Positions 25,939-52,659 of a stretch of 64,000 nucleotides of DNA are shown one piece after another. The first letter of the stretch is position 1; each line of letters opens with the position of its first letter. The DNA lies in IMG/VR virus record IMGVR_UViG_3300042892_005961, positions 62,001-126,000 of that record. One strand, 5' to 3'. A model generated the notes under the pieces. That model saw nothing but the letters and a program-made list of their open reading frames with translations. It made no database searches and was not told where the DNA came from. The position numbers were made by a program, and so were the translations under genes.

Positions 25939-27393
25939 TTAAATTGGTTTATTATAATTTTCTTTATCTGAAACATATACACCTGGCTCAAAATGAGTTA
26001 TTCTACCATCAGTCATTGCCACATACGGAATTGTATTATCAATTACTAATGAATTGTACCAATCTTCCAATTCAGGGAACGTCTCAACAAAATTCTTATT
26101 TCTACGAATATCATATTGAACATAAAAACTTTTAAAATCATGATATTGCATTGACATATCCATTTCACTTGTATTATGACCTCTATTAACAACTTCGATA
26201 TAATCAATTAATCTTTGAATTTGTGCTCCTTCATTCATATTAATTAATGGATTCTTTTTATGTTTTCTCCACCACATTGATAACTTACCATGTAAATCAT
26301 GCTTGACGTCATCTGGTAATGTAAGTGGTGACATAAATGCTGGCCATCTTAATATGTTAAAATCTACAACTGGTTTATGTGTTCCGTATTTTTCTTTTAA
26401 TTTCAACATATCATCTAAAAATTCGGTAATGCTAAATAAACACAAACTATTAATTGTCATCATGATAACAACTTGTCTAATTTTAGCACTCTCAATTACT
26501 TTAACTAAATTACTTCTCCATAGTTCATAATTTAATCCATCTCTAATATATTCCGCTTGCTCACCATAAGCTTCACAACTTGTATACAAATCGAATTCTT
26601 TGATATCTAATTCGTGAGATATACTAATTAACCTATTCACAGTCGTTTCGTTAAGACCTAGGTTAGAATTGACTGCAAGTCGTAAATTAGGGGATGGGTA
26701 TTGTTTCATTATATCCATGAACTGCCAAAAATTACGTGACTGTGATGGTTCTCCACCAGTTATACGTATTTCCATTAATTTTTGAGACAATTCAGGCCAC
26801 CATTTTAAGAAAGCATCCACATATGGATTGTTTTCATTGTATTTACCATAAATCTCTGACCAAGAACCATCTGCGTAATATGCACCTGCACTTGTGGTTT
26901 TAAAATTTTGATATGGTCCGTTATCTCTAATATCTTTACCCCATGTTGTTGAGTATCCTGAATTACAATATGAACATGCAAAATTACATGTTCTATCAAA
27001 ACTAACCTCCATAGTTTGAGGTATAATGTCAGCATCCCAAGGTAATTCATTTAACGCCGCAATATCTTCAGGACTATATATTTGACTTTTATATACCCTA
27101 TCGGAAATATTATTTCTACCAATATCCTCAATCTTCCAACAGTAAGAACATTCCGCCGGTTTAACACCCTCTAACATCATTTTACGGATTTCCTTTTTGA
27201 AATCGGTATTATGTAATGCTGCAGGGTTGGTTTTAATTGCTTCAACATCTATTGGATGTGGTAATGGTAGGTGACATGAATTTGTAAACCCATGACCTAA
27301 ATGTAAACTTACGTTTAACCATTTAGCAGCACAAAAACTACAACTTACTTTATTTAAATGTTCATCTCTCCAATCACTTAAGTGTTCTGACAT
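25939..27393 (-). CDS. Radical SAM enzyme with an extra N-terminal Cys cluster
   Basis: CNFACSYC, ITGGEP, NSN; N-terminal CAAKW...SCH and CSYCW. Confidence 0.85.
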   Translation of the reverse strand: MSEHLSDWRDEHLNKVSCSFCAAKWLNVSLHLGHGFTNSCHLPLPHPIDVEAIKTNPAALHNTDFKKEIRKMMLEGVKPAECSYCWKIEDIGRNNISDRVYKSQIYSPEDIAALNELPWDADIIPQTMEVSFDRTCNFACSYCNSGYSTTWGKDIRDNGPYQNFKTTSAGAYYADGSWSEIYGKYNENNPYVDAFLKWWPELSQKLMEIRITGGEPSQSRNFWQFMDIMKQYPSPNLRLAVNSNLGLNETTVNRLISISHELDIKEFDLYTSCEAYGEQAEYIRDGLNYELWRSNLVKVIESAKIRQVVIMMTINSLCLFSITEFLDDMLKLKEKYGTHKPVVDFNILRWPAFMSPLTLPDDVKHDLHGKLSMWWRKHKKNPLINMNEGAQIQRLIDYIEVVNRGHNTSEMDMSMQYHDFKSFYVQYDIRRNKNFVETFPELEDWYNSLVIDNTIPYVAMTDGRITHFEPGVYVSDKENYNKPI

Positions 27394-27439: not shown

Positions 27440-28177
27440 TTATATAATAAATTCTTTTGGTACCTTTTCTAAGAAATTACTATTTTTAGATTCATCGTAT
27501 ACTATACCTAAATTATTAACTGTTTTAAAATCATATAAACAGACGATATCATCATAAAATCTATTTTTTAAAATTACATCGGTTTCCTTTTCATATATAC
27601 TTTTAGAATCTTTAATGTTTGAAGTTTTACTTATTAATGAAAAATGATTCATTTCTATTTTAGTAAAACCTCCAAATGTGTTTGGATGTGGACTTGGACT
27701 GCAACAACCGATAAATAATCCAGGTCTTTTGTAGTCATCGACAAACTCATTGGTGAAATCAATATGATTGTCCTCAACAAAGTTTTTATAAACGGTTATT
27801 CTATTTTCATCTCTAATAATACTAACGGTCATTCCTTTTTCAATATCTTCTTTAGTTACTGATTTAAATACAACATTATTATAACAATCTTCAGATTCAG
27901 TGGTTGTCCAAAATTCAAAACATAACTCCCCTTGTGGTTTATTATAGCTTAATCCCATATTTTTACCTGATTTACCAAATATCATACGAACATCCTCACC
28001 CTCGTAGTTGTCTTCTATTTTAAAATTACATGTAATAATAAAATTTTCGTTGTAAAAAAAATCAGTTACTGATTGATTTTCAGATTTATTGAATTCGGTC
28101 ACATATTGATTTTCGTGGTGTGTAGATAAGTCCCATTGAAACTTTAACCAATACGGTTCTCTATAATTTATTGTCAT
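27440..28177 (-). CDS. Stand-alone LamG/ConA-like domain protein, homologous to the two N-terminal repeats of the next gene
   Basis: IFGKSGKNMGLSY, FEFWT, LFIGCCSP and EMNHFS align with repeats in 28161-30983. Confidence 0.55.
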   Translation of the reverse strand: MTINYREPYWLKFQWDLSTHHENQYVTEFNKSENQSVTDFFYNENFIITCNFKIEDNYEGEDVRMIFGKSGKNMGLSYNKPQGELCFEFWTTTESEDCYNNVVFKSVTKEDIEKGMTVSIIRDENRITVYKNFVEDNHIDFTNEFVDDYKRPGLFIGCCSPSPHPNTFGGFTKIEMNHFSLISKTSNIKDSKSIYEKETDVILKNRFYDDIVCLYDFKTVNNLGIVYDESKNSNFLEKVPKEFII

Positions 28178-30983
28178 TTTCTATTTTTTTAATAAAGTTA
28201 GTTAATTCAGGATAGTACTCTTGGCAATTCATACCTCTTCTTACTTCATATTCTTTTATGAATTTCAAGAAATCTTTTTTATTATCGTCAAATAAACTCA
28301 TTTCAGTTTCATAGTCTGTCACAAATATATCTCTTAATCTTACAATCTTTTCTATTTCTTGTGTTGAGAATCCTACGTCTTCAATTGTTTGTTGTTCGTA
28401 AAAATTAAGACTCCTATATGTTGAGTTGAACTTCATGTATTTAATCCACCTATTAAAATATTCAACATCTATATAATCTTTTAATATTCTAAATGTCATA
28501 AAAGATGGGTGACGAAGATATGATGTGTCTAAAATTATTGCTGAGTTCCAATACCTCTTAGTGTTGAAATGTTTAATTTTATATTCGTGTATCTTTTTAA
28601 TTAATTTCTCATAAGAGAATATACTGAACACATTGAACGTTGACATTACAACAATTGTTACTTTATCTAGTACTGTTAATATCTTATCGATGTTTGAAAA
28701 TAATCTATCAAATTCTAATCCAAATCTTGTGTATTCGGCTTGTTTACCATAACCCTCACATGATGTGAATAATACAACTTCTTTGACTCTATCTTCTGAT
28801 ATTATTTTTTCAAGTTTCAATATTAATCTATCAATCAATTCATCGTTAACCCCCAAATTACTATTGATTGATAATTTTAATTCTTTATTGGGTGTTTCAG
28901 ATTCGATAATATAATCCAATACTTTCCATGTGTCTTTAGATAATAAAGGTTCTCCTCCTGTTATTCTAAAAGTATCTAACGTTGAGTATAATTCAGGGAA
29001 CCATTGCCAAAACGCCTCGACGTATGGATTTTCTTCTGTTTGTCTATATGGTTTAGTTCCTCTATCCTCCATTCTTTTTGTCCCATTATATTCGTGTGTC
29101 TCTAAACTATATCCGCCGTATTCATTTATTTCTTCCATCCACTTAGAAGAATATTCAGGACCACAATACGCACATTTAAAATTACACGTATTAGAAAAAC
29201 TAACTTCGGCATATTTTGGATTATAGTTATCTCTCCAATGTGAATTGGCAATCTCATCAAAATAAGGTTCAGACCACGGTTCTGATGATTTAAAAAATCT
29301 ATCAGAGAAAGAATCTGAATTATCTTCAACGTTCCAACAATATTGACATTCTGAAGGTCGTTTACCTTCTAACATTTCTTTTCTTGCTTGTTTTTTAACT
29401 ACACTATTATGTAACGATGTTGGATTTCTTTTAATCTCATCTAAACCTATCTTATGTGGTTCAGGATGGTGACAACTATGTGTCGTACCATTATGTAAGT
29501 GCATTGTTACTTGTGTCCATTTAGCTAAACAAAATCCACAACCGACTTTATTTAACTTATCTTTCATTTGATTAAAATCTACCATTTTTTTAAATGATAA
29601 AAGATCAACCATTTCAATTGAGGTTTCTTTATTTAAATTATCGAAAATTTCAAGGTCTTCAGTCCTTTTAAAATTAAAATATGTTAGTAGATTATCAGAT
29701 TTAATATTCTTCTCAAGATCTTCAATACTCATTATACCATAATAGACACTAAAATGATTTAATTCCATTTCTGTAAAACATCTATGACTTTCCAATAAAG
29801 AGCTTGGATTGTGGCAACCAAAATAAATTGGTTCTGTATTATAATCTGTCAATAAATCTTCAGTCACCTCAATTCTATCAATTAATTTGAAATTGTGATA
29901 TAATTCAAAATATGAATTTTTTTCATAGATAATTGAAATCGTTAAACCATTATGTAAATTATTTTGATTTATCTTATAATCTTTATGACAATGAAATTGG
30001 GTATCTGTTTCATTTTTTTGTGTCCAATATTCAAAAACAAATTTTTCCACTTCATAATCAAAACTAATACCAAAGTTTTTACCTGGTATACCTAAGAATC
30101 CTATTTTTTGATCTTGGGTATATTGTCTTTCAACTTTAAAAGTAATGTTAAGTGAATAACTTTTATTACTTAATACGTTTTGTAATTCTTTTGTTTTTAA
30201 GATAAAAGGTTTTTGGTGTTCTATCTTTAAACCCGGTACCCTTATTTTCTTATGTTTAATTCTGTCAGCAACACTACTATTTAAATCACTTAATGATATC
30301 TTAATAAGTTTGTCTTTTTGATTTTGAATAATGTTGTATTCCAAATCTTCTTTATGAACCAAATATTTTTCCTTAAAATCAAAATAACATGATAAATTAT
30401 CGTTTTTTATTTTACTATTGTTATAGAATTTTTCAATATCAACTATATCATTTACACCATTAAAAATACTAAAATGAAGTACATCCATTTCAGTAAAACA
30501 TCTATGTCTTTCATTGTCAGCATCGGGATTGTGGCAACCCATATATAACGGTTGGGTTAAGTAATCTTCAAATAATGGACCGTCTAATTCAATTTCAAAA
30601 AATAAATAAAAATTATGATATAACTCAAACTTTAAATTTTCTTTATCATATATCAAAGTAAATACTATACCGTTTTCAATGTCATTTCTATTAATATGAA
30701 AATCTTTGTAACAATGAAAAGTGTCCTTTCCTTTATTCCCCTTTGTCCAAAATTCAAATACAAATGTCTCGACCTCAAAATCGTAACTAATCCCAAAGTT
30801 TTTACCTGGCATTCCAAAGAATCCTATTTTTTCACTATCATCGTGAAATTTATCTACCTTAAATTCTATTGTTAACGTTGTACTTTCCGTTAATAATGGA
30901 TTTATTTTATCGCTATTAATATTTGGTAACTCTAATAACCAGGGTTTTTCGTATTCTAAAAACATTCTATTTTGTTTTAACAT
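28161..30983 (-). CDS. Two LamG-like repeats fused to a radical SAM domain
   Basis: Repeats G(M/I)PGKNFGIS...FE(F/Y)WT...GCHNP...HRCFTEM...HFS occur twice. Then CLAKW...SCHHP, CQYCW, CNFKCAYC and ITGGEP, paralogous to 25939-27393. Confidence 0.85.
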   Translation of the reverse strand: MLKQNRMFLEYEKPWLLELPNINSDKINPLLTESTTLTIEFKVDKFHDDSEKIGFFGMPGKNFGISYDFEVETFVFEFWTKGNKGKDTFHCYKDFHINRNDIENGIVFTLIYDKENLKFELYHNFYLFFEIELDGPLFEDYLTQPLYMGCHNPDADNERHRCFTEMDVLHFSIFNGVNDIVDIEKFYNNSKIKNDNLSCYFDFKEKYLVHKEDLEYNIIQNQKDKLIKISLSDLNSSVADRIKHKKIRVPGLKIEHQKPFILKTKELQNVLSNKSYSLNITFKVERQYTQDQKIGFLGIPGKNFGISFDYEVEKFVFEYWTQKNETDTQFHCHKDYKINQNNLHNGLTISIIYEKNSYFELYHNFKLIDRIEVTEDLLTDYNTEPIYFGCHNPSSLLESHRCFTEMELNHFSVYYGIMSIEDLEKNIKSDNLLTYFNFKRTEDLEIFDNLNKETSIEMVDLLSFKKMVDFNQMKDKLNKVGCGFCLAKWTQVTMHLHNGTTHSCHHPEPHKIGLDEIKRNPTSLHNSVVKKQARKEMLEGKRPSECQYCWNVEDNSDSFSDRFFKSSEPWSEPYFDEIANSHWRDNYNPKYAEVSFSNTCNFKCAYCGPEYSSKWMEEINEYGGYSLETHEYNGTKRMEDRGTKPYRQTEENPYVEAFWQWFPELYSTLDTFRITGGEPLLSKDTWKVLDYIIESETPNKELKLSINSNLGVNDELIDRLILKLEKIISEDRVKEVVLFTSCEGYGKQAEYTRFGLEFDRLFSNIDKILTVLDKVTIVVMSTFNVFSIFSYEKLIKKIHEYKIKHFNTKRYWNSAIILDTSYLRHPSFMTFRILKDYIDVEYFNRWIKYMKFNSTYRSLNFYEQQTIEDVGFSTQEIEKIVRLRDIFVTDYETEMSLFDDNKKDFLKFIKEYEVRRGMNCQEYYPELTNFIKKIENDNKL

Positions 30984-32412
30984 TTATAAACATTGTATTT
31001 GGGTATATCGTCTCATCAACACTTATGATATCCAATACGTCTAATATTTTATTTAATCCGTCTTCTTTATAATCTATCTTTTTTTGTTGCATTTCAGTAA
31101 CAAATCTTTTCTCATTTCTTGCGGTCGTTTCTCCTTTTGCCCATTTATCAATTCCATCAACTTTAATAAATCCTTCATCCTCATGAAACATACACTTAAA
31201 GTTACCTTCTCTTCTTATTGGAATAATATTATCTACAACTTCGATATTTTCTTTAGTAATTTCAGTATTAAGATTTTCACATATTATGTTATTTACCTTA
31301 TCTAAATAACCATTCTCAAAATCCATATGTAAAACCAAACTTTTTTCTTTACTAACCGACGTTTTTATATTTTTATAACACTTGTCATATATTTTAACTT
31401 CAGCAATTTGACCTTTAAAATATGTTTTTTGGTTGCTACAAAACCCTAATATAAATGGATTGGTGTTATCGTGTTTTTTAAGGTTTTCTCCGACCATGAA
31501 TGGTTTATTCTCTTTAACATCGTTTACGTTAGTAACTAATTCATTGTTAACAAAGAAATACATTTCTTTTGTTTTATTATCAAATGAAACTGTCACCCAC
31601 GTCCATTCATTTTCAAATTTCTTAACCCAATTATTATGATAATTTTCGTTTTTATCAAAAACTGTCATGTTAACCGTCCTTGAATTATTAAAGGATAACC
31701 CCCATGTCCAAGATTCGTGTTTTCTTAATATTGGGTATTCAATAAATTTCTTTTCTTTGTCACCAACCAACCAAATAGGCACTTTCTCTTGTTGTTGTTC
31801 TGCTTTAAATAATACAGAAATAGTATGATTACCAGATAAACATTTACTTATCTTTTCGTTTGTTGGTATAACCACTAATGAATCATCTCCATTAAAATTT
31901 ACAACCGATTTTTCTTTATGTGATTTAAAAATCTTACCATCTTTATAACCCTCAAAATAACACCTCCAAAAAAGATCATCATCTTCTTGACCCCAATCCC
32001 AATATTCGTTTGAATAACCATTGGTTTGATACGCTTGTTCTTTGGTAAATAAAACAACACCTCCAAAGTATTGATCATACCCTAATGTGTAATTATACTT
32101 TGATAATTTGGTTGCAATATGAACTGGTGATTTTTCAGGATAGGAGTAATCACAAATTAAATTATCTTTATCGATTGCTAACATATCCACGTCGTGCCAA
32201 GCTACATAATCACAACCATCTTCAAAAGCATAATGTGCTGCAATGTTTTTTGTTGCCCCTCTATTAAATAATTTATCATCAACTTGATGTCCAACATAAA
32301 ATTTATGTTCTATTCCTTTTTCGTTTAAATATTTTGATAAATGTGGTATCAAATTCTCAATGTGTTCCTTTCTATTTCTGTACGGTATACAAATACCTAA
32401 TTTATGACTCAT
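30967..32412 (-). CDS. GT7 (beta-1,4-galactosyltransferase-like) glycosyltransferase with an inserted LamG domain
   Basis: IPYRNR, FNRG, HDVD, YFGGV, NGYSNEYWDWGQEDDDL; then a LamG segment (FKGQIAEVKIYD); the GT7 tail resumes at RREGNFKCMFH. Confidence 0.8.
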   Translation of the reverse strand: MSHKLGICIPYRNRKEHIENLIPHLSKYLNEKGIEHKFYVGHQVDDKLFNRGATKNIAAHYAFEDGCDYVAWHDVDMLAIDKDNLICDYSYPEKSPVHIATKLSKYNYTLGYDQYFGGVVLFTKEQAYQTNGYSNEYWDWGQEDDDLFWRCYFEGYKDGKIFKSHKEKSVVNFNGDDSLVVIPTNEKISKCLSGNHTISVLFKAEQQQEKVPIWLVGDKEKKFIEYPILRKHESWTWGLSFNNSRTVNMTVFDKNENYHNNWVKKFENEWTWVTVSFDNKTKEMYFFVNNELVTNVNDVKENKPFMVGENLKKHDNTNPFILGFCSNQKTYFKGQIAEVKIYDKCYKNIKTSVSKEKSLVLHMDFENGYLDKVNNIICENLNTEITKENIEVVDNIIPIRREGNFKCMFHEDEGFIKVDGIDKWAKGETTARNEKRFVTEMQQKKIDYKEDGLNKILDVLDIISVDETIYPNTMFINVKTK

Positions 32413-33824
32413 ATTCCAACTGTTACAAATGTTATGTTATTTTCGTTTGTTATTCCGTGTTCTACAAAATTTAAATCTGATAATCCATCGTTATATAATA
32501 ATTCGTGATTTGTAGATACTTCATTTATAAATCGTAGTTGATTCCATCTAGTAGATTGATCTTTCCATTTGTTATCTAAAAATCCATTTTCTTCGTGAGG
32601 TAAACTTTCAAATAGAGATTTTCTCCTATGTGGAACATATAATTCGTATATACTATCTACTATTAAGTCTGTAATTTCACAATTAATGATTTCACCATCA
32701 TTATTATTTCCTGATAAATCTTTTAATTTATAACCTTTTATTATCTTAGTGTCATAATATAATTTAAGGGAATCCGCAGATTTGTAATCACCAAAATTTT
32801 GTGTTAAACCCTTAAATTTATTTTTTGATATTTCCATTATTTCATTATCATCTAAAACGATATCATAAACGGCAAAAGCATCAAAATATCCTTTAAAATA
32901 TTTTGGTTCATATTCATTGTTAAGGTCACCTGTTCCAATATAAAAAAATGGTTGTTTTTGGTATTGATGTAGTTTTCCTGAAAATTCTACTTTACCAATA
33001 ATATCCCCGTCTTGGTATACTTTAATAATCTTATCTACGTCATTAATTGTAATGGAAATATTTGTCTTATAATTTTTCTTTATTTTAGAATTGACATAAA
33101 GTACATTATGTTTATTATCAAAAGTACAAATATTATATCTGGAAAATGAGTTGAATGATATTGAAAAATCATATCCTGGTATTGTAAATATATTAAATTG
33201 ATCCACTTCTTTTGTATGGTCACATATTATATCATCAGGATAAAAGGAAATAAATAATGTAATATCCTTATTAAAGTTAAGATTATTTATACCTTTTACG
33301 TAAGCATCTTTTCCATTAAATTTTAATACAGAACCTGATGTTCCCATATTGTCTAAATAAAGTGTATTTAAATCTAAATTATTTTTTATACATCTCAATA
33401 ATAAATCGGTGTCTTCATAACCCCACCCCCAATACTTGTTAGAATACCCGTTTATTTTTTTAAAATCTTTAACATTAAACATTGTAACTCCTCCAAAATA
33501 GGTATCGAATAATTCCCTATCTTGGTTTGAAAAATTGGTGGCTAAGTGTGTGGGTGTAATAGAATAACTATAATCTACATCAATCGGTAACATGTCTATA
33601 TCATGAAAAACAACATACTTACATTTAAGTTTCTCAGCATAAGTAAATCCTATATTTAATAACATTCCTCTATTGAATAATTTAGCATCATCTTGTTCAA
33701 CTATAATAATTTCATAAGGAATATTCTTTTCATTAAGATATTTTGTAATTCTTTCTTTAAAAATGTCAAGTTGATCGTATCTATTTCTAAATGGAACAAC
33801 CACTCCGATTTTTTTATTTCGCAT
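32409..33824 (-). CDS. GT7-like glycosyltransferase with an inserted LamG domain (paralog)
   Basis: VPFRNR, FNRGMLLN, HDID, YFGGV, NGYSNKYWGWGYEDTDL; LamG segment (FKGYFDAFAVYD); the GT7 tail resumes at RRKSLFESLPH. Confidence 0.8.
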   Translation of the reverse strand: MRNKKIGVVVPFRNRYDQLDIFKERITKYLNEKNIPYEIIIVEQDDAKLFNRGMLLNIGFTYAEKLKCKYVVFHDIDMLPIDVDYSYSITPTHLATNFSNQDRELFDTYFGGVTMFNVKDFKKINGYSNKYWGWGYEDTDLLLRCIKNNLDLNTLYLDNMGTSGSVLKFNGKDAYVKGINNLNFNKDITLFISFYPDDIICDHTKEVDQFNIFTIPGYDFSISFNSFSRYNICTFDNKHNVLYVNSKIKKNYKTNISITINDVDKIIKVYQDGDIIGKVEFSGKLHQYQKQPFFYIGTGDLNNEYEPKYFKGYFDAFAVYDIVLDDNEIMEISKNKFKGLTQNFGDYKSADSLKLYYDTKIIKGYKLKDLSGNNNDGEIINCEITDLIVDSIYELYVPHRRKSLFESLPHEENGFLDNKWKDQSTRWNQLRFINEVSTNHELLYNDGLSDLNFVEHGITNENNITFVTVGI

Positions 33825-34062
33825 TTTTCTTTACTTTCTTATCGTCAGTTTTAATTTCTTCTTCTTCTTTGAATGGAATTTCTTTCACTATTTTATTATG
33901 AAATTCAGCCAAATAATATTGGACTCTATTTCCCCATTCATCTTTATCTATTTCCTCAAACCACACAGTTAATGCGTCTAATGAATTAGCGATTTTTTCT
34001 AATGCCTTGATTTTACGTGTTTCAAGTTCAAGTTCAATTTTATCTTTTTCTTCCTTTGTCAT
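33814..34062 (-). CDS. Hypothetical acidic/basic helical protein
   Basis: 82-aa ORF coupled to both neighbours; no recognisable motif. Confidence 0.6.
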   Translation of the reverse strand: MTKEEKDKIELELETRKIKALEKIANSLDALTVWFEEIDKDEWGNRVQYYLAEFHNKIVKEIPFKEEEEIKTDDKKVKKNAK

Positions 34063-34916
34063 ATTGATATGATTTTTTTAATTAATTTATTCCAATTTTT
34101 ATAACGGTTATATTCGGGTTTATCTAATCCTAATTCAAACATAAAATCAGGATTTAATAAATCTATTTTAAAATTTGTCTTCTTTAATTCTTTATACATT
34201 TGAAAATATTCACTTGAAAATGCGTACTCTTCATTTAGGTTTGCAACATTCATTACTCTATCTATCGATGTTGAATCCCATTTAAAGTGATGAACTTGTA
34301 CCGAGTGTGTATCCACCGGTGCAATTAATGGATGACTCCATCCTTGCCATCTCCATGTTGTGTGGTCATCGATTTTAGCGTAATGTTGTCCTGCCGTCAC
34401 ATCAACATATCCTTTCATAATACAAATCTTATTTGGACACGCATTACTCATTGGATATCTAAAAAAACCAGCATTAGGAAATTGTTCCCATATAGATATG
34501 TCATTAACTAACTCACTAAACTCACCTCCACTACCTATTCTATCAATAAAACCACCTCTTACAATATCCCAATTATTTTCTTGACAATCATATATTATTT
34601 TACGTAAATCATCATTAGGATATAAATGGAATTCATCAATATCGGCAATAACATACCAATTATCTTTTTGTTTTGCTTTAGCAAAATTATAAAGTTGTGT
34701 TACTTTTTCCCAATCAAATACTCTTTCTTGAACGGTTATAACAACATTAACTTTTTCGTAGTTTTTAATTACTTGATTAATTTCTTCGGTTAAATTTGGA
34801 TATAACTCCGTTTCATAAACGGCAATCAAAATTTCATCAACATGTTTTTGATAATGTTCAATGAAATGTGGAAGTAAGTTAATTCCGTGACCTATGACTG
34901 TTAATAATTTAATCAT
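34059..34916 (-). CDS. GT-A fold glycosyltransferase (GT2-like)
   Basis: LLPHFIEHY, WYVIADIDEF (DxD), HHFKW. Confidence 0.65.
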   Translation of the reverse strand: MIKLLTVIGHGINLLPHFIEHYQKHVDEILIAVYETELYPNLTEEINQVIKNYEKVNVVITVQERVFDWEKVTQLYNFAKAKQKDNWYVIADIDEFHLYPNDDLRKIIYDCQENNWDIVRGGFIDRIGSGGEFSELVNDISIWEQFPNAGFFRYPMSNACPNKICIMKGYVDVTAGQHYAKIDDHTTWRWQGWSHPLIAPVDTHSVQVHHFKWDSTSIDRVMNVANLNEEYAFSSEYFQMYKELKKTNFKIDLLNPDFMFELGLDKPEYNRYKNWNKLIKKIISI

Positions 34917-35641
34917 TTCTTATTAATTACCGTTATACCACTTGAAGATGGTTTGTTAGGTAATATACGAAAATTATATAAATTAATCAAATTATATGAT
35001 GGGTTTTTTTCTAATTCCTTAACTAATTTTGATGGTCCATCAAATCTATGATGGTCTTTTTTTGAATCTTCAGATATTAATAGATTTTCCTCGTAATTCG
35101 GATCGGTATCGTGTATAACGATAATTCCTTTATCAGATAAAATATTTGAATATAAATCAAAATCCAATTTAACTCCCTCATAGGAATGGTCACCATCAAT
35201 AAATAAAACATCTATCTTTATATCTTGTAAAACAAAGAAATTATAATAAGCATCTTCTGATGTTGATTTAATTAATCGTGGTTGGAATTGTTTGTGATAG
35301 TATGAGTTTTCATCCTCTAAATCATTTGGACCTCCAATACCGTTACATGCGTCAACGATATATGTTACACCAATGTCTCCCCAATTAATATCAGGGTTAC
35401 CTTCAAATATTCCTTGTTTGTGTAAATCAATTCTTGCTTGTGTCATAATACGGGGTATAAACCCACCTCCCGACCCGATACAGACACAGGTTTTTGCTCT
35501 CATATGTTGTATCAGTGAATAAACAATAAGACCGTCACCCATATGTTCTGTCGTTGCACCATGTGTCCATCTATAAGGGACTGAATCACCCCCATTTGTT
35601 GTGATATTTCCTGTTATGAAATCTTGATTGGTTATCATCAA
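34913..35641 (-). CDS. Class I SAM-dependent methyltransferase (Methyltransf_24-like)
   Basis: VCIGSGGG, DVLFIDGDHSYEGVKLDF, GIIVIHD. Confidence 0.8.
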   Translation of the reverse strand: MMITNQDFITGNITTNGGDSVPYRWTHGATTEHMGDGLIVYSLIQHMRAKTCVCIGSGGGFIPRIMTQARIDLHKQGIFEGNPDINWGDIGVTYIVDACNGIGGPNDLEDENSYYHKQFQPRLIKSTSEDAYYNFFVLQDIKIDVLFIDGDHSYEGVKLDFDLYSNILSDKGIIVIHDTDPNYEENLLISEDSKKDHHRFDGPSKLVKELEKNPSYNLINLYNFRILPNKPSSSGITVINKK

Positions 35642-41817: not shown

Positions 41818-44800
41818 TTATGATTTTTTAGGAGTTGCGATATTAGGGTCAACTTCAGTTAAAGCAAACTTATATACTTTACCCTTCTTATTATTATATA
41901 AGAATAAATCATCTTCACCCTCTACTATTGTCCAATCACCAATTCCGTTATTTAAAGATAAATCCGATGTATAAACTGTACTCCAACGAGCGGCCGCCGA
42001 ACCTAAATCTCTTGTTCCATTTGCCTCAGGTAAAACGTTACCTGCCACCGTTAATGTTGATCCGTCAAATGTTAAATTGGCTTCAGCATTTAATGTAACA
42101 CCACCGGCACTTGTCATTATTCTATTATCAACCGCATTTGTAATTGTTGTTGTACCACTAGAACCTGAAGAACCGTTACTACCACTAGAACCTGAAGTTC
42201 CAGAACTACCGTTAGAACCTGAAGAACCACTAGTTCCTGATGACCCTGAACTACCCGATGTTCCACTAGAACCTGAAGATCCGTTAGATCCACTAGAACC
42301 TGATGTACCACTAGACCCTGAAGAACCATTTGAACCTGATGTTCCTGAAGATCCACTAGTACCTGAAGTTGCCGCAGTATATGATGTTCCGTTTATTGAT
42401 AATGAACCAGTTATACTTAAACTACCCGTAACTTGATGTGTGTCATCTAATGTGTCTCCAAACTTTGTTGATCCTGAAGAATACATAACAGATGATGTAA
42501 CATATGTCATGAAAAGTTCGTCAGCCGTAATTGCTCCCTTAACTTTAAAAGAACCTGTAATCTCAACATTTTTAGTTGCCGACCATATAGACCCTGTTTG
42601 TGCGAATATTGAATCTCCCGATGAACCACTTGAACCATTGGAACCTGAACTACCTGATGTTCCACTTGATCCTGAAGTACCTGAAGTACCACCTGAACCA
42701 GACGATCCTGATCCACCACTAGAACCTGATGTACCTGATGTTGCGGACGTATATGATAGACCACCAATTGTAACTCCATTTGTAAAATTAGCTGAACCCG
42801 ATACGATAATATCGTCACCAAAAACAACACTATTACCACCTGAACTTAATATTTTAGATCCGTCTTGTAGTACAATATTTCCTCTAACATCAACCGAACC
42901 CGTCGTTGGGTCAATTAATATATTACCTCCACCTGATGATTTCAATTGAATATCTCCATCCACAGTTTGGAATGTGATTGTATCTGTACCTTGTTCTAAA
43001 ATCTTAATTGATTGACCGTTGTCAGTTGTAATCTGTAATTCTTGGTTTGTACTACCCAAAACTTTTTGTCCGTCAATGTATAATGATGCACTTGATAAGT
43101 ATAAGTGTCTAAATGGATTTGACTCACTACCTAAATCAAAAGAACCACTACCCACAGGTACAATTGACCCACTGAATGTTTGTGTTCCTTTAAACGTATT
43201 TGAACCTGTTGTTGCAAAACCTAAATTTGTTCCTTGAACACTTGAACTTACTATATTACTACTTAATAGAGCTGAAGATAAATCAACCGCTCCACTTACC
43301 ATATGTCCTCCTCTAACAACGTTCACACTACCTGAAACTGCAAGTGGGAAATAAACATTAAGATTATTATTATCAACAGATTCTATTCTACTTGGTATGA
43401 TTATACTTCTACTATCATCCCAAACCGTAACAACAGGGAAATCAATACCTAAATTATGAAATACAGACCATGTTGTTAATGATGCAAATGTTTGTGTTGC
43501 TCCACCAATACCATCTCTACCACTTGTTCCTGATGTACCATTTGATCCTGATGAACCCGAACCTCCACTTGTTCCTGAAGAACCGTTAATACCACTAGTT
43601 CCTGAAGAACCATTAATACCACTCGTACCTGATGAACCGCTAGTTCCAGATGAACCACTTGTACCTGACGTACCCGCAGTTCCCGCTCCACCAACTGTTA
43701 CACTTATTGTTCCCTCTTGTGCAAATGGGAAATATACACTTATATTATTTGTGTCTGTTGAAATTATTTCACTTGGGATTACAATACGTCCGTCATTATC
43801 AAATACTTGAACTGATGGATATCTAACACCCATTTGGTGATTAAATGACCATGTGGCTGCTGCAACACTAACGTTTTGTGTTTTTGTTTGTCCGTTTAAT
43901 ACAACGGCGTTTAAAGCATGTGATGCCGTTAATGCGTATGATGAACTTGCAATTGTTGTTGTTGAACTTGATACGTATGAATTAAACCATGACTCATCTA
44001 ACTTACCTGTTCCAACAACTGCACCATTAACGTATAATGATCCAGTAATCTTTACAGATCCAGTAAAATTGTGATTATCATCTAATGTATTACCAAATGC
44101 CGTAGATCCTGATTCAAATAATACTGAAGATGTAACTAATGCCGTATGAATTTCTTTTGCTGTAAGTGTTCCTGTAATTGTTAAATCACCATTAACTTTT
44201 GCATTATTTGTTGTTTCCCAAACTGAACCTGTTAAAGCAAATAAACTATCTCCTGATGATCCTGATGAACCACTTGTTCCTGTTGTACCACTTGACCCTG
44301 CTGTTCCTGAAGAACCTGCTGTTCCTGAAGAACCGCTAGATCCTGATGTACCTGATGAACCGTTACTTCCACTAGTTCCTGATGAACCACTAGTTCCTGA
44401 AGAACCTGAAGTTCCTGTGGATCCACTAGACCCTGATGTACCTGAAGAACCATTAGATCCGCTAGAACCTGATGTTCCCGCAGTTCCTGAACTTCCTGAT
44501 GAACCATTTGAACCTGACGTACCTGAAGAACCACTAGATCCTGATGTTCCTGAACTACCTGAAGAACCACTAGTTCCTGTAGAACCGCTAGATCCTGATG
44601 TTCCTGAACTACCTGAAGAACCTGACGTTCCAGAAGAACCATTACTACCCGATGTTCCTGATGAACCATTAGATCCTGAAGTTCCACTAGAACCACTTGT
44701 ACCACTTGTTCCCGATGTTGTGGACGTATATTCGGTTCCATTTATATTAAATGAACCTGTTAAATTAATTGAACCTGATAAAATTAAATTATTGTTTTCA

Positions 44801-45309
44801 TCAAGTAACATTTGTCTGTTACCATTTCTACTGAAAACTAAACCATCAATATCAGTTGTTGCACCTCTTGCAGCACCTATCGTCCAATTCTCTCCACTCC
44901 AATTAAAACGAACACCCGATGCGACTCTATTTGGTGTGTTAAATCCTGCTGCATTATAAATTGAACTATCAGGAACAAATGCTTGAACATTTGCAACGGG
45001 GTCCGAACCTGATACTACTAATGATGTTAATGATGTATTCCCTAAAACTCTTAAAGAACCTGACGTATTTAAAGATCCTGTAATATTTTCTGTTCCAATT
45101 AAATTGAAACTACCACTAAGATTTAATGAACCTGTGTTCTGAGCATTTGTAGTAACTATTTCCTCAATAGAGGTAGAAGCCGATCCTGATTTGGCAAAGT
45201 ATAATTTACCGTCGGTTGTGTTTATTGCTATTTCCCCTAATTGTAATTGGGAGTTAGTAGGTCTATTCCCACCAGTGGAACTTCTACGTAGTTTTACTAT
45301 TTGACTCAT
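41818..45309 (-). CDS. Long tail fibre, 1163 aa, with Gly-X-Y Ser/Thr tracts
   Basis: Mtd-N-like N-terminus (KLRRS...GEIAINTTDGKLY), several G(S/T)S tracts and repeated TGSL beta modules; C-terminal DLSLNNGIGDWTIVEGEDDLFLYN fibre domain. Confidence 0.8.
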   Translation of the reverse strand: MSQIVKLRRSSTGGNRPTNSQLQLGEIAINTTDGKLYFAKSGSASTSIEEIVTTNAQNTGSLNLSGSFNLIGTENITGSLNTSGSLRVLGNTSLTSLVVSGSDPVANVQAFVPDSSIYNAAGFNTPNRVASGVRFNWSGENWTIGAARGATTDIDGLVFSRNGNRQMLLDENNNLILSGSINLTGSFNINGTEYTSTTSGTSGTSGSSGTSGSNGSSGTSGSNGSSGTSGSSGSSGTSGSSGSTGTSGSSGSSGTSGSSGSSGTSGSNGSSGSSGTAGTSGSSGSNGSSGTSGSSGSTGTSGSSGTSGSSGTSGSNGSSGTSGSSGSSGTAGSSGTAGSSGTTGTSGSSGSSGDSLFALTGSVWETTNNAKVNGDLTITGTLTAKEIHTALVTSSVLFESGSTAFGNTLDDNHNFTGSVKITGSLYVNGAVVGTGKLDESWFNSYVSSSTTTIASSSYALTASHALNAVVLNGQTKTQNVSVAAATWSFNHQMGVRYPSVQVFDNDGRIVIPSEIISTDTNNISVYFPFAQEGTISVTVGGAGTAGTSGTSGSSGTSGSSGTSGINGSSGTSGINGSSGTSGGSGSSGSNGTSGTSGRDGIGGATQTFASLTTWSVFHNLGIDFPVVTVWDDSRSIIIPSRIESVDNNNLNVYFPLAVSGSVNVVRGGHMVSGAVDLSSALLSSNIVSSSVQGTNLGFATTGSNTFKGTQTFSGSIVPVGSGSFDLGSESNPFRHLYLSSASLYIDGQKVLGSTNQELQITTDNGQSIKILEQGTDTITFQTVDGDIQLKSSGGGNILIDPTTGSVDVRGNIVLQDGSKILSSGGNSVVFGDDIIVSGSANFTNGVTIGGLSYTSATSGTSGSSGGSGSSGSGGTSGTSGSSGTSGSSGSNGSSGSSGDSIFAQTGSIWSATKNVEITGSFKVKGAITADELFMTYVTSSVMYSSGSTKFGDTLDDTHQVTGSLSITGSLSINGTSYTAATSGTSGSSGTSGSNGSSGSSGTSGSSGSNGSSGSSGTSGSSGSSGTSGSSGSNGSSGTSGSSGSNGSSGSSGTTTITNAVDNRIMTSAGGVTLNAEANLTFDGSTLTVAGNVLPEANGTRDLGSAAARWSTVYTSDLSLNNGIGDWTIVEGEDDLFLYNNKKGKVYKFALTEVDPNIATPKKS

Positions 45310-45330
45310 ATATATGTGTTCTAAATCCTT

Positions 45331-45367
45331 GTGATATATATCACGGTTAAAGACCTATGTAGGTCTT
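45331..45367. repeat. Two adjacent inverted repeats in the fibre gene leader
   Basis: GTGATATATATCAC (45331-45344, perfect palindrome) and AAGACCT-ATGT-AGGTCTT (45350-45367). Confidence 0.75.
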
Positions 45368-45370
45368 ATG

Positions 45371-45380
45371 ATAAATACTT
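45371..45380 (-). promoter_or_regulatory. AAGTATTTAT motif (candidate late promoter)
   Basis: Exact 10-mer just downstream of a terminator and upstream of the 1163-aa fibre gene. Confidence 0.55.
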
Positions 45381-45390
45381 GTTATAAATA

Positions 45391-45419
45391 AAAAAGGAGA
45401 CTTTTTATAGTCTCCTTTT
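45391..45419 (-). terminator. Intrinsic terminator
   Basis: AAAAGGAGACT-6nt-AGTCTCCTTTT stem followed by a T run on the minus strand. Confidence 0.8.
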
Positions 45420-45422
45420 GTT

Positions 45423-45593
45423 TTAATTTACGTTTTCAATTGAAAGAACTGTTCCTTCCTGTCTTCCAACATATTTGTTTACTTCTATCGTTGTAATGTT
45501 TAGTGCCTCTTCTATTGAGTTACCAACGGCACTACAATGATATGTTATTTTTTCTTCACCTACTTGATATTCTACTTTAAATCTATGTCTCAT
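45423..45593 (-). CDS. Small hypothetical protein, 56 aa (MRHRFKVEYQVGEEKITYHCSAVGNSIEEALNITTIEVNKYVGRQEGTVLSIENVN)
   Basis: Hand-translated, below the ORF track cutoff; fills the gap between the mucin-like gene and the terminator. Confidence 0.65.
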   Translation of the reverse strand: MRHRFKVEYQVGEEKITYHCSAVGNSIEEALNITTIEVNKYVGRQEGTVLSIENVN

Positions 45594-45618
45594 TTTAATT
45601 TAATTTTATTTAATTTTA

Positions 45619-48600: not shown

Positions 48601-48786
48601 AAAAGTACAAGTTTGACTAAAATCAGTAAAGTATAATGAATAATCACCTAAGTAGTTATCACTTACATAATTGTAAGGAACAACATGTGAACCTAAGTTA
48701 ATAGTTCCCCCACTACATGGTGAAAATGTAATTGTAGCAGTTTGACCACTATAATTTGTTGTTAATATCTGAACTGTTGTTGCCAT
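45619..48786 (-). CDS. Mucin-like Pro/Thr-rich virion protein with interspersed Cys-containing domains
   Basis: Many PTPTP / ATPTP / TAVP linkers separate roughly 60-90 aa domains containing paired Cys; no signal peptide evident. Confidence 0.7.
46003..46120 (+). repeat. 118-bp direct repeat, copy 1 (copy 2 at 46552-46669)
   Basis: Read-through comparison shows identical sequence 549 bp apart within the PT-rich gene. Confidence 0.8.
46552..46669 (+). repeat. 118-bp direct repeat, copy 2
   Basis: Identical to 46003-46120. Confidence 0.8.
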
Positions 48787-48805
48787 TTTATATCTATCTT
48801 TATTT

Positions 48806-49198
48806 TTATATTATATTATAAGTTATATCACAAGTCATATCAAATGGTACTACATTATATGTAATATCACAAGATGGTACGGATGGTGTTGGTGTTGGTG
48901 TACTAGTTGATACTGATGTAGGTTGTGGTGTTGGCGTTGGTGTATCAGTTGCCGGTAAAGGTGTTTCTGTATTTGTTGGTGTAGGTGTCGGAGTATCTGT
49001 TGGATTAGGAGTTGGTGTACTTGTTGCCGGTAATGGTGTAGCGGTACTAGTAGGTTGTGGTGTTGGTGTATCGGTTGCCGGTAAAGGAGTAGGTGTATTT
49101 GTAACTACATTAGTTGGCGCAGGTGTTGGAGTAGGTGTAGGTGTTCCATTATTAGTATTTGGAACTATTCTAAGTTTTCCTGAAAATTGTATACCCAT
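48806..49198 (-). CDS. Short Pro/Thr-rich protein
   Basis: About 90 aa of PT repeats between a short N-terminal strand and a duplicated C-terminal CDITYN motif. Confidence 0.7.
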
Positions 49199-49206
49199 AG
49201 TACTCT

Positions 49207-49216
49207 ATAAATAGTT
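49207..49216 (-). promoter_or_regulatory. AACTATTTAT motif variant (candidate late promoter)
   Basis: One mismatch to AAGTATTTAT; lies between a terminator and the next ATG. Confidence 0.45.
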
Positions 49217-49233
49217 TATTTTTCTAATAAGAC

Positions 49234-49267
49234 AAAAAAAAAGGAAGATTTTTTAGATCTTCCTTTT
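49234..49267 (-). terminator. Intrinsic terminator
   Basis: AAAAGGAAGAT-7nt-ATCTTCCTTTT stem with a long T run on the minus strand, downstream of the 1116-aa fibre gene. Confidence 0.8.
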
Positions 49268-49287
49268 AATTTTTTTGTTACGTTTTT

Positions 49288-52638: not shown

Positions 52639-52659
52639 CTACGTGTGTTTGTTTAGTTT

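What the first reader, a model, noticed from the sequence alone, without database searches (positions are those of the whole stretch)
30967..33824. Two eukaryote-type GT7 galactosyltransferases, each split by an inserted LamG domain
Seen: both keep the GT7 motifs through WG.ED, then about 230 aa of LamG/ConA-like sequence (approx. 31230-31930 and 32650-33340), then resume the GT7 His-containing tail. Established: GT7 includes beta4GalT7, which galactosylates Xyl-O-Ser at Ser-Gly sites of proteoglycans. Inference: the lectin insert confers processivity or acceptor targeting. With Ugd, PAPS enzymes, sulfotransferases and hundreds of Ser-Gly dipeptides on the fibres, a proteoglycan-mimicking coat is conceivable. 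No xylosyltransferase was recognised in this window.
Basis: partly seen in the sequence, partly recalled or inferred. Interest (0 to 1): 0.66.

Follow-up and report, generated by a model that had tools for sequence, protein, structure and literature searches.

The report
Phage GT7 glycosyltransferases with LamG insert
Two adjacent genes of an uncultured jumbo phage from lake water encode sugar-adding enzymes of the beta-4-galactosyltransferase family (GT7), each interrupted by a lectin-like beta-sandwich domain. The design is real, common in uncultured phages and unstudied, but the suggested proteoglycan mimicry is not supported.

Summary
Window 30967-32412(-) (GT-A, 481 aa) and 32409-33824(-) (GT-B, 471 aa) are tandem, overlapping paralogues with 30% identity. 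Both match Pfam Glyco_transf_7N, Glyco_transf_7C and Laminin_G_3.

An MSA-based AlphaFold model (pLDDT 88) aligns with bovine b4GalT1 at Z 27.6, over 218 residues spanning model 1-481. Residues about 163-393 form a LamG/pentraxin-like sandwich (Z 17-20). With the insert removed, both proteins align collinearly with compact, uninterrupted bacterial GT7 proteins, including the invariant tail His.

The host genome is a tailed jumbo phage (211 kb held, relatives about 335 kb) from lake water, not a giant virus. The architecture occurs on at least 549 IMG/VR contigs and in Atlas clusters that are 100% viral. It lies in a conserved cassette: methyltransferase, GT2-like, 82-aa protein, GT-B, GT-A, twitch radical-SAM.

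"Eukaryote-type" is misleading, because the phage enzymes nest among bacterial compact GT7s. The proteoglycan reading is unsupported. The b4GalT7 xyloside-pocket residues Tyr194 and Arg226 are replaced, and the Ser-Gly dipeptides are a by-product of G-X-Y repeats (no acid-flanked SGxG).

A relative of the insert domain is also fused twice to the neighbouring radical-SAM enzyme, which favours a shared targeting module. The most likely role is cytoplasmic glycan building on Ser/Thr-rich virion fibres. That role is inferred, not shown.

The parts
32409..33824 (-). GT-B: GT7 glycosyltransferase with LamG-like insert (471 aa)
   Evidence: ORF. Pfam 7N, 7C and Laminin_G_3. PDB b4GalT7 E 1.3e-26. About 2000 homologous 90% clusters.
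33369..33824 (-). GT-B N-terminal GT7 core (aa 1-152): PFRNR, FNRG, HDIDM, YFGG and WGYEDTD motifs
32652..33368 (-). GT-B inserted LamG-like beta-sandwich (aa ~153-391)
   Evidence: Pfam Laminin_G_3 at 28.8 bits. Alignment with GT-A.
32412..32651 (-). GT-B C-terminal GT7 tail (aa ~392-471) with the invariant His and the DGLS motif
30967..32412 (-). GT-A: GT7 glycosyltransferase with LamG-like insert (481 aa)
   Evidence: ORF. Pfam. PDB b4GalT7 E 6e-31. AF2 model pLDDT 88. VIA-align Z 27.6 to b4GalT1.
31933..32412 (-). GT-A N-terminal GT7 core (aa 1-160): PYRNR, FNRG, HDVDM (D74, D76), Y115-FGG, W140-G-Q-E143-D144-D-D
31231..31932 (-). GT-A inserted LamG/pentraxin-like beta-sandwich (aa ~161-394)
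   Evidence: Pfam Laminin_G_3 E 5.8e-10. VIA-align PAPP-A LamG Z 20.4, 4dqa Z 20.0, pentraxins Z 17 on model 163-394.
30970..31230 (-). GT-A C-terminal GT7 tail (aa 395-481): invariant P398 and H410, a low-confidence lid region at 411-440, DGLN, and a final strand
33814..34062 (-). Conserved 82-aa acidic protein directly upstream, overlapping the GT-B start
   Evidence: Present in 72 of 80 related loci. No family match.
34059..34916 (-). 285-aa protein with a weak GT2-like match; a conserved cassette member
   Evidence: Pfam Glyco_tranf_2_4 E 0.0014, below the cut-off. Present in 71 of 80 loci.
34913..35641 (-). Methyltransf_24 class I methyltransferase; a conserved cassette member
   Evidence: Pfam E 1e-11. 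Present in 68 of 80 loci.
28161..30983 (-). 940-aa twitch radical-SAM enzyme with two N-terminal ~200-aa domains homologous to the GT7 insert
   Evidence: NCBIfam NF033640 at 307 bits. Internal repeat 48% identical. hhalign to the GT insert prob 97.9%, E 3e-13.
27440..28177 (-). 245-aa stand-alone copy of the same domain family
   Evidence: BLASTP to both radical-SAM N-domains, E 1e-17 to 3e-19. hhalign.
25939..27393 (-). Second twitch radical-SAM enzyme (484 aa)
   Evidence: NCBIfam NF033640 at 297 bits. Present in 76 of 80 loci.
41818..60166 (-). Candidate substrates. Tail-fibre genes with Ser/Thr-rich collagen-like repeats at 41818-45309, 49288-52638, 52729-58671 and 58688-60166, plus a Pro/Thr-linker protein at 45619-48786.
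   Evidence: Pfam Collagen. PHROG tail fibre. Composition. The link to the GTs is inferred from position only.

Best explanation
GT-A and GT-B are soluble, catalytically competent, metal-dependent inverting GT7 glycosyltransferases of an uncultured freshwater jumbo tailed phage.

**Origin.** They descend from the compact prokaryotic form of GT7. An ancestor acquired a LamG-like beta-sandwich in the loop between the helix that follows the WGxEDD catalytic loop and the strand that leads to the metal-binding His and the mobile lid. The gene then probably duplicated, and the two copies diverged most in the insert.

**Donor.** The conserved Tyr of YFGG suggests a UDP-hexose donor without a 2-acetamido group, such as UDP-Gal or UDP-Glc. 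This is an inference from b4GalT1 Tyr289.

**Role of the insert.** The insert acts as an acceptor- or scaffold-recognition module. The same domain family is fused to the neighbouring twitch radical-SAM enzyme, so chemically different enzymes of one operon are brought to one substrate.

**Pathway.** With the methyltransferase, the GT2-like protein and the large nucleotide-sugar cluster nearby, the pair most likely adds two successive sugars to a glycan built in the cytoplasm on phage structural proteins. The candidates are the Ser/Thr-rich collagen-like tail fibres and the Pro/Thr-linker protein encoded just upstream on the same strand.

**Shown:** architecture, motifs, fold, distribution, synteny, shared module. 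**Inferred:** activity, donor, role of the insert, acceptor.
For: - **GT7 membership and intact catalytic residues.** Pfam 7N and 7C. PDB E 6e-31. Z 27.6 to b4GalT1. R12, R14, D74, D76, Y115-F-G-G, W140, G141, E143, D144 and H410 are invariant in 113 sequences of both paralogues.
- **Insert.**
- **Lid.** The lid-like region 411-440 has lower pLDDT.
- **Soluble enzymes.** No TM segment was found, and the protein starts at the first core strand.
- **Natural and maintained.** About 1700 and 2000 homologous clusters. At least 549 IMG/VR contigs. Identical DNA in independent lake metagenomes.
- **Conserved cassette**.
- **Shared module.** The radical-SAM N-domains and p245 match the GT insert (prob 97.9%, E 3e-13) but not the neighbouring generic LamG_3 proteins (prob 0.6%).
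- **The insert is the fastest-evolving part.** Within-clade identity is 55% and 53% for the insert against 82% and 66% for the core. Between the paralogues it is 20% against 43%.
- **Context.** All genes from 24207 to 63807 lie on the minus strand behind the tail-fibre genes. The fibres have 57% Ser+Thr in their repeats. A PT-rich protein is present. A nucleotide-sugar cluster, Ugd, a carbamoyltransferase and an APS kinase are nearby.
- **No export machinery.** No polytopic Wzx/Wzy-like protein was found in the 211 kb held.
- **Precedent.** A substrate-binding domain confers specificity on the cytoplasmic O-glycosyltransferase FlmG (PMC7591256). Virion glycosylation by phage-encoded GTs is cited in PMC12619734.
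Against: - No biochemical data exist. No cultured phage carries the gene.
- The acceptor is inferred from gene position and composition only.
- The bacterial compact GT7 examined lies beside a GT2 and a Wzi capsule-assembly gene. The ancestral acceptor is therefore probably a saccharide, not a protein.
- The genome is only 63% complete, so the absence of export machinery is weak evidence.
- RNA-library contigs cover parts of both genes but do not prove transcription.
- Monophyly of GT-A plus GT-B has only SH-aLRT 70 in a quick tree.
Confidence: 0.45

Rival explanations
1. The enzymes remodel a host envelope polysaccharide (O-antigen, capsule or EPS repeat unit) during infection, for example to block superinfection or adsorption of progeny to debris. 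The LamG insert then acts as a carbohydrate-binding module for the lipid-linked or polymeric acceptor.
For: The nearest non-phage relatives are bacterial compact GT7s, and in Peristeroidobacter soli one lies next to a GT2 and a Wzi capsule-assembly gene. LamG/ConA-like folds often bind sugars, and the match to 4dqa, a putative carbohydrate-binding protein, has Z 20. The window carries many sugar-nucleotide genes.
Against: No initiating phosphoglycosyltransferase, flippase, polymerase or ABC exporter was recognised in the 211 kb. The cassette sits in the late structural gene block, downstream of the fibre genes on the same strand. The same domain on a radical-SAM enzyme is harder to explain for a lipid-linked glycan.
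Confidence: 0.25
2. The enzymes are b4GalT7-like galactosyltransferases acting on Xyl-O-Ser at Ser-Gly sites of the fibres, starting a proteoglycan-like, uronic-acid-containing sulfated chain.
For: b4GalT7 is marginally the best PDB sequence hit (E 6e-31 against 1.5e-28 for b4GalT1). Ugd-like, APS kinase and a very weak sulfotransferase match are in the window. There are 482 SG dipeptides in the fibres.
Against: In the phmmer alignment to human b4GalT7, Tyr194 aligns with Leu (GT-A) or Glu (GT-B) and Arg226 aligns with Gln or Tyr. Tyr194 has an indispensable hydroxyl, since Y194F is inactive (PMC4367269). The YFGG motif is b4GalT1-like. No xylosyltransferase was recognised, and no SDR reaches a UDP-xylose synthase cut-off. 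SG arises from G-X-Y periodicity: 397 SG..G, three SG.G, and no acid-flanked SGxG.
Confidence: 0.05
3. The enzymes glycosylate hypermodified bases in phage DNA as protection from restriction.
For: Phage GTs commonly do this (discussed in PMC12619734). A DNA methyltransferase lies in the window at 62794-63807.
Against: No thymidylate-synthase-like hydroxymethylase was found in the 211 kb. GT7 enzymes are not known DNA glycosyltransferases (my own knowledge). The cassette lies among fibre and sugar-pathway genes, not replication genes. A lectin-like insert and a methyltransferase/radical-SAM partnership fit glycan tailoring better.
Confidence: 0.03
4. The insert has no substrate-recognition role. 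It is a structural or oligomerisation domain, or it anchors the enzymes to the virion or an assembly scaffold, and acceptor choice lies wholly in the GT7 cleft.
For: LamG_3 domains are frequent in phage structural proteins (BFVD matches), and six LamG_3 matches occur in this genome. No conserved ligand-binding residues were identified in the insert; only structural-looking invariants were seen (G175, F202, G323, G334).
Against: The insertion point is next to the His-bearing lid. The insert diverges fastest between paralogues that otherwise keep identical catalytic residues, which is the pattern expected for a specificity module. A related domain is on a radical-SAM enzyme of the same operon.
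Confidence: 0.12

Closest known systems
Animal beta-1,4-galactosyltransferases b4GalT1 and b4GalT7 (CAZy GT7; PDB 1tvy, 1o0r, 3lw6, 4irq)
   Same: GT-A fold with 30-40% identity over the core. They share the PFRNR, FNR, DVD, (Y/F)xGG and WGxEDD motifs, the C-terminal His on a mobile lid and the DGLN motif.
   Different: The phage proteins have no membrane anchor, no stem and lack the first ~45 residues of the 7N domain. A ~235-aa LamG-like domain is inserted before the lid. The b4GalT7 xyloside-pocket residues Tyr194 and Arg226 are not conserved. The proteins are cytoplasmic and phage-encoded.
Compact bacterial GT7-like proteins (for example in Steroidobacter agaridevorans, S. flavus, Peristeroidobacter soli, Rhodoplanes tepidamans and many MAGs)
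   Same: They have the same truncated N-terminus and the same motifs. After removal of the insert the alignment is collinear through the tail, with the invariant His. Identity to the phage core is 33-44%, and the phage clades nest among them.
   Different: They are uninterrupted and 210-300 aa long, with Pfam 7C matched to position 77 of 78. The one context examined is a capsule/EPS-type locus. None has the insert.
Giant-virus GT7 proteins (Mimivirus LCMiAC01 galactosyltransferase, a Megaviridae GT7-like protein, Aureococcus anophagefferens virus putative b4GalT) in BFVD
   Same: They are viral GT7 cores with 26-31% identity over ~155-164 aligned columns.
   Different: They match the N-core only. 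No LamG insert was seen, and they belong to a different virus realm.
Glycosyltransferases with appended recognition domains: FlmG of Caulobacter (N-terminal flagellin-binding domain; PMC7591256) and, from my own knowledge, ppGalNAc-transferases with a C-terminal ricin-type lectin domain
   Same: The logic is the same: a non-catalytic binding domain sets the acceptor choice of a soluble or luminal O-glycosyltransferase.
   Different: In those enzymes the domain is appended at a terminus. Here it is inserted inside the catalytic domain next to the lid. The catalytic families also differ (GT-B-type or GT27 against GT7). The function here is untested.
Glycosylated collagen-like surface fibres: Bacillus BclA (GxT repeats O-glycosylated) and Mimivirus fibrils (my own knowledge, not tested here)
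   Same: These are Ser/Thr-rich collagen-like filaments on a particle surface, with dedicated sugar pathways encoded nearby.
   Different: No evidence was obtained that the phage fibres are glycosylated. The enzymes involved in those systems are not GT7.

Membership tests
CAZy GT7 / Pfam Glyco_transf_7N + Glyco_transf_7C | Both Pfam domains score above their gathering scores | tested here: met
   GT-A: 7N 58.3 bits (cut-off 27) and 7C 66.7 bits (cut-off 23). GT-B: 70.1 and 71.3 bits.
CAZy GT7 / Pfam Glyco_transf_7N + Glyco_transf_7C | GT-A fold superposable on solved GT7 structures, C-terminal part included | tested here: met
   VIA-align to 1tvy_A: Z 27.6, rmsd 2.1, 218 residues aligned, model 1..481 against chain 178..399. 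b4GalT7 (4m4k): Z 26.3. This is a predicted model, pLDDT 88.
CAZy GT7 / Pfam Glyco_transf_7N + Glyco_transf_7C | Catalytic and metal-binding motifs: DxD, WGxEDD with an Asp base, and a C-terminal His | tested here: met
   D74, D76, W140, G141, E143, D144 and H410 are invariant in 113 sequences. The His aligns with the invariant His of bacterial GT7s. Equivalence to b4GalT1 D252/D254, D318 and H347 comes from established knowledge.
CAZy GT7 / Pfam Glyco_transf_7N + Glyco_transf_7C | Inverting beta-1,4 transfer from a UDP-sugar | not testable with these tools
   This needs an enzyme assay.
Eukaryotic Golgi-type GT7 | Type II membrane anchor, stem region and full-length 7N domain | tested here: not met
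   No TM-like segment was found. The Pfam 7N match starts at profile position 46-47 of 134. The model starts at bovine residue 178. Bacterial compact GT7s share this truncated form.
b4GalT7 subfamily (xylosylprotein 4-beta-galactosyltransferase) | Xyloside pocket: Tyr194, Tyr196, Tyr199, Trp224, Arg226, Asp228, Asp229 (human numbering, PMC4367269) | tested here: not met
   From the phmmer alignments to 4irp_A: Tyr194 aligns with Leu110 (GT-A) or Glu (GT-B). Arg226 aligns with Gln or Tyr. Asp229 aligns with Asp (GT-A) or Thr (GT-B). Tyr196, Tyr199, Trp224 and Asp228 are kept or conservatively replaced. Y194F abolishes activity in the human enzyme.
b4GalT7 subfamily (xylosylprotein 4-beta-galactosyltransferase) | Pathway partners: a protein xylosyltransferase and a UDP-xylose supply | tested here: not met
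   No such family was found among the window ORFs scanned. All SDRs score below the UDP-xylose synthase cut-off (77 bits against 294). The genome is 63% complete, so absence is not proven.
Laminin_G_3 / concanavalin A-like lectin superfamily (the insert) | Pfam PF13385 above the gathering score | tested here: met
   GT-A scores 40.0 bits against 27.6. GT-B scores 28.8 against 27.6, which is borderline. Profile comparison with the neighbouring LamG_3 proteins gives prob 96.7%, E 3.5e-10.
Laminin_G_3 / concanavalin A-like lectin superfamily (the insert) | Beta-sandwich jelly-roll fold | tested here: met
   PAPP-A LamG Z 20.4, 4dqa Z 20.0 and pentraxins Z 17, all on model 163-394.
Laminin_G_3 / concanavalin A-like lectin superfamily (the insert) | Sugar or Ca2+ binding | not tested
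   No ligand-site analysis was possible without the model coordinates.

The most novel reading that the evidence does not exclude
Freshwater jumbo phages coat their Ser/Thr-rich collagen-like tail fibres with a phage-made glycan that is methylated and possibly uronic, carbamoylated or sulfated. The glycan is assembled in the cytoplasm by a conserved cassette. In that cassette, one family of LamG-like domains docks chemically unrelated enzymes onto the same fibre substrate: it is inserted into two GT7 transferases and fused twice to a twitch radical-SAM enzyme. This would be a phage counterpart of giant-virus fibril glycans, built around a new recognition-module principle for protein glycosylation.
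Probability: 0.22. Interest if true: 0.8.

Novelty: new variant of a known kind. Interest (0 to 1): 0.55.

Why it matters
GT7 is known almost entirely from animal Golgi enzymes. Here a compact prokaryotic form, carrying a lectin-like domain spliced in next to the catalytic lid, proves abundant in uncultured lake phages, with thousands of sequence clusters.

If the insert sets acceptor choice, it offers two things. One is a natural, modular way to retarget a well-understood galactosyltransferase, which is useful for glyco-engineering. The other is a handle on virion glycosylation in environmental jumbo phages, a process documented so far in only a few cultured phages. Finding the same module on a radical-SAM enzyme suggests a general docking principle within one operon.

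The work also corrects two tempting readings. The genes are not evidence of eukaryote-to-virus transfer, and they are not evidence of proteoglycan mimicry.

Tried and rejected
- **Single-sequence AlphaFold of GT-A.** It gave an unusable model (pLDDT 32). The MSA-based run was used instead.
- **Tail searches against the PDB.** Sequence searches with the tail alone and with a tail profile found no GT7. The tail's identity rests on the structure model and on bacterial homologues.
- **MAFFT with the intact insert.** It misaligned the bacterial tails against the start of the insert. It was redone with the insert excised in the script.
- **Cultured phages.** blastn and tblastn against 50,697 cultured-phage records found no match.
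- **Insert-only homologue search.** It returned only fragments of the same family, so no donor of the insert was identified.
- **Moraphage lead (PMC12619734).** No HSP70 was found in the 211 kb. Membership is undecided.
- **DNA-glycosylation idea.** No thymidylate-synthase-like gene was found.
- **PHROG scan of ten large ORFs outside the window.** It gave only replication genes, so capsid and terminase were not identified. The DnaB helicase has no close cultured relative, at most 30% identity.
- **Literature searches.** Searches for GT7 or Glyco_transf_7C in phages found nothing relevant.
- **Not run.**
  - The big representative-protein search was left out because the family scans did not leave the protein open.
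  - Complex prediction was left out because no binding claim is made.
  - No phylogeny with eukaryotic and NCLDV GT7 sequences was built, because none were available by reference with names.

Full report
**What is in the sequence.** GT-B is 32409-33824 (471 aa) and GT-A is 30967-32412 (481 aa). The GT-B stop and the GT-A start share ATGA. GT-B starts inside the end of an 82-aa ORF, and GT-A ends 17 nt inside the next ORF, so the genes are packed like an operon.

Both proteins match Pfam Glyco_transf_7N, Glyco_transf_7C and Laminin_G_3 above the curated cut-offs. The 7C match stops at profile position 61-64 of 78, just before the LamG match begins. The two proteins are 30% identical over their whole length, insert included. 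The best solved relatives by sequence are Drosophila and human b4GalT7 (E 6e-31, 2e-29) and b4GalT1 (about 1e-28). These alignments cover only aa 3-156.

**Is the domain really inserted?** A single-sequence fold failed. With a 113-sequence alignment of both paralogue families (A1), AlphaFold gave pLDDT 88.4 and pTM 0.80.
- Foldseek, being local, aligned GT7 structures to about 156 columns and LamG/pentraxin/PAPP-A folds to the middle.
- VIA-align bridged the insert. Bovine b4GalT1 (1tvy_A) gave Z 27.6, rmsd 2.1, with 218 residues aligned, model 1..481 against chain 178..399. b4GalT7 gave Z 26.
- PAPP-A LamG (Z 20.4), BACOVA_03559 (4dqa, Z 20.0) and pentraxins (Z 17) covered model residues about 163-394.
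- The region 411-440 has lower confidence (pLDDT 63-74), as expected for the mobile lid that follows the metal-binding His in b4GalT1.

The tail by itself is not recognisable against the PDB by sequence. Sequence-level support came from bacteria instead. A scan of 185,579 species genomes found about 70 genomes with compact, uninterrupted GT7 proteins. These are 210-300 aa long, and their Pfam 7C match reaches position 77 of 78. A profile of the phage tail hits the C-termini of these proteins (best E 7e-6 in a 73-sequence set).

With the insert excised, GT-A and GT-B align collinearly with them. The alignment runs through the RRxGxF..L.H motif, the conserved Asn, DGL(S/N)xL and the last strand. 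The insert therefore sits between the helix after WGxEDD and the strand carrying the lid His. That is GT-A aa 161-394 (window 31231-31932) and GT-B aa about 153-391 (32652-33368).

**Catalytic competence.** Across 113 sequences of both paralogues, the following are invariant: R12 and R14 (PFRNR), F49-N-R-G, D74 and D76 (DVD), Y115-F-G-G, W140, G141, E143, D144, P398, H410, W424 and G452. From the published b4GalT1 work (established knowledge), these correspond to the UDP-binding, metal-binding (D254, H347) and catalytic-base (D318) residues.

The Tyr of YFGG corresponds to bovine Tyr289, which disfavours 2-acetamido donors. This points to UDP-Gal or UDP-Glc, as an inference. Neither protein has a TM-like segment, and both begin directly with the first core strand, so they are soluble cytoplasmic enzymes.

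**What genome is this?** The window is bases 62001-126000 of a 211-kb IMG/VR record, 31% G+C, classed provirus and 63% complete.
- Genes are tightly packed. Neighbours are PHROG tail fibres, a Peptidase_S74 chaperone, an antiterminator and a DNA methyltransferase.
- An 85-97% identical cassette lies on a 335,630-bp contig.
- No cultured phage is close.
- Atlas clusters with this architecture are 100% viral, Uroviricota.
- The DNA recurs in lake-water metagenomes from at least a dozen studies that are not its possible source.
- Independent DNA contigs reproduce it without frameshifts. Short contigs from two lake metatranscriptome libraries lie on both genes, which is compatible with transcription but does not prove it.

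So this is an uncultured freshwater jumbo tailed phage, not an NCLDV. Three of the six MAG-binned full-length copies carry Flavobacteriales-type labels. That is a host lead only. The moraphage lineage (PMC12619734) is a possible relative but was not confirmed.

**Distribution and synteny.** Each paralogue has about 1700-2000 homologous 90% clusters, all unnamed. At least 549 IMG/VR contigs encode relatives.

In the 80 best loci the order is conserved: Methyltransf_24, 285-aa GT2-like, 82-aa protein, GT-B, GT-A, twitch radical-SAM. The counts are 68, 71, 72, 80, 80 and 76 of 80, and most of the misses occur where the flank is cut. A fibre homologue lies upstream in 31 loci.

The insert evolves faster than the core. 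Within-clade identity is 55% and 53% against 82% and 66%. Between the paralogues it is 20% against 43%. Searching with the insert alone found only fragments of the same family.

**A shared module.** The adjacent 940-aa protein is a twitch radical-SAM enzyme (NF033640, 307 bits). It is preceded by two ~200-aa domains that are 48% identical to each other and homologous to the next gene's 245-aa product. Pfam sees nothing in these domains.

| Profile-profile comparison | Probability | E-value | Aligned columns |
|---|---|---|---|
| Radical-SAM N-domains and p245 vs GT7 insert | 97.9% | 3e-13 | 176 |
| Radical-SAM N-domains and p245 vs neighbouring LamG_3 proteins | 0.6% | 0.089 | 41 |
| GT7 insert vs neighbouring LamG_3 proteins | 96.7% | 3.5e-10 | 156 |

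Four consecutive gene products thus carry one subfamily of beta-sandwich attached to different chemistries. This is the strongest argument that the insert is a targeting or docking module.

**Context and likely substrate.** All genes from 24207 to 63807 are on the minus strand. Upstream are four fibre proteins with collagen-like repeats of the G-(S/T)-(S/D) type, 57% Ser+Thr, with no Pro or Lys in the repeats. There is also a 1055-aa protein made of Cys-containing modules joined by Pro/Thr linkers.

Convergent with the cassette is a nucleotide-sugar cluster: four SDR epimerase/dehydratases (one fused to a 2OG oxygenase), an RmlC-like protein and a split TPP enzyme. Further on are Ugd-like, carbamoyltransferase, DUF5672, GDSL, APS kinase and P4H-type 2OG oxygenases.

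No polytopic exporter or initiating transferase was recognised in the 211 kb. No hydroxymethylase for DNA hypermodification was found either. I therefore favour cytoplasmic O-glycosylation of virion fibres. Only position and composition support this.

- *"Eukaryote-type".* This is not apt. Bacterial compact GT7s are as close as the animal enzymes (33-44% identity against 35-40%) and share the truncated N-terminus. In a quick ML tree, phage A (SH-aLRT 100) and phage B (99) nest among them. A plus B together has only 70, and no eukaryotic sequences were included.
- *Bacterial context.* One bacterial homologue lies beside a GT2 and a Wzi capsule gene, so the ancestral acceptor was probably a saccharide.
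- *Proteoglycan idea.* Human b4GalT7 needs Tyr194 (Y194F is dead) and uses Arg226 in its xyloside pocket (PMC4367269). In the alignments these positions are Leu or Glu and Gln or Tyr. The local motif LxY.QYFGG resembles b4GalT1.
- *Missing partners.* No xylosyltransferase or convincing UDP-xylose synthase was found.
- *Ser-Gly sites.* Of the 482 SG dipeptides, 397 occur as SG..G, which is triplet periodicity. Three occur as SG.G, and none of those has flanking acids.

This is a new variant of a known enzyme kind. It is abundant in nature and not described in the literature searched. Its function is testable with ordinary biochemistry.

Noticed in passing
window 28161-30983 (-) and 27440-28177 (-): A twitch radical-SAM enzyme carries two N-terminal ~200-aa domains. 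Pfam does not recognise them, but they are homologous to the GT7 insert and to the stand-alone 245-aa neighbour. A second twitch radical-SAM lies at 25939-27393.
   Followed up: partly
window 45619-48786 (-): A 1055-aa protein built of small Cys-containing modules joined by long Pro/Thr linkers (Thr 20%, Pro 14%). It has no family match and sits between collagen-like fibre genes. The local GC and AT skew is reversed there (46-50 kb).
   Followed up: partly
window 14785-24179 (+): A plus-strand nucleotide-sugar cluster: four SDR epimerase/dehydratases (one fused to a 2OG-Fe(II) oxygenase), an RmlC-like cupin, a split TPP enzyme (E1_dh at 17127-17762, Transket_pyr at 23577-24179) and several ORFs with no family. 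It suggests an unusual, possibly branched, deoxy sugar.
   Followed up: partly
window 258-13442 (-): Further glycan-tailoring candidates: an APS kinase (5256-5693), a very weak sulfotransferase match (258-815), two P4H-type 2OG oxygenases (834-2032), a carbamoyltransferase (7263-8930), DUF5672 (8934-9683), a GDSL-like protein (9643-10266) and a Ugd-like dehydrogenase (12267-13442).
   Followed up: partly
window 35663-36787 (-) and 37386-38111 (-); G000:C1:210059-211162: Stand-alone Laminin_G_3 proteins lie just upstream of the cassette, one with a weak F5/8 type C match. Two more LamG_3 matches lie at the end of the contig, making six LamG_3 matches in the genome.
   Followed up: no
L131 (Peristeroidobacter soli) 3877-7739; L093-L169: Compact uninterrupted GT7 proteins are widespread in bacteria: Steroidobacteraceae, Acidobacteriota, Planctomycetota, Waddliaceae and others. 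In P. soli the gene lies between a GT2 and a Wzi capsule-assembly gene.
   Followed up: partly
G000 whole record; L008 6104-7252 (-): IMG/VR classes the 211-kb record as a provirus at 63% completeness. No capsid or terminase was identified by the PHROG scan of ten large ORFs. A 382-aa protein with four hydrophobic segments carries a TacA-like antitoxin match. The published moraphage lineage of lake and marine jumbo phages, with core glycosyltransferases and many antitoxins, may be related.
   Followed up: partly
window 41203-41814 (-): A 203-aa protein with a Peptidase_S74 intramolecular chaperone domain lies directly after the 1163-aa collagen-like fibre gene.
   Followed up: no
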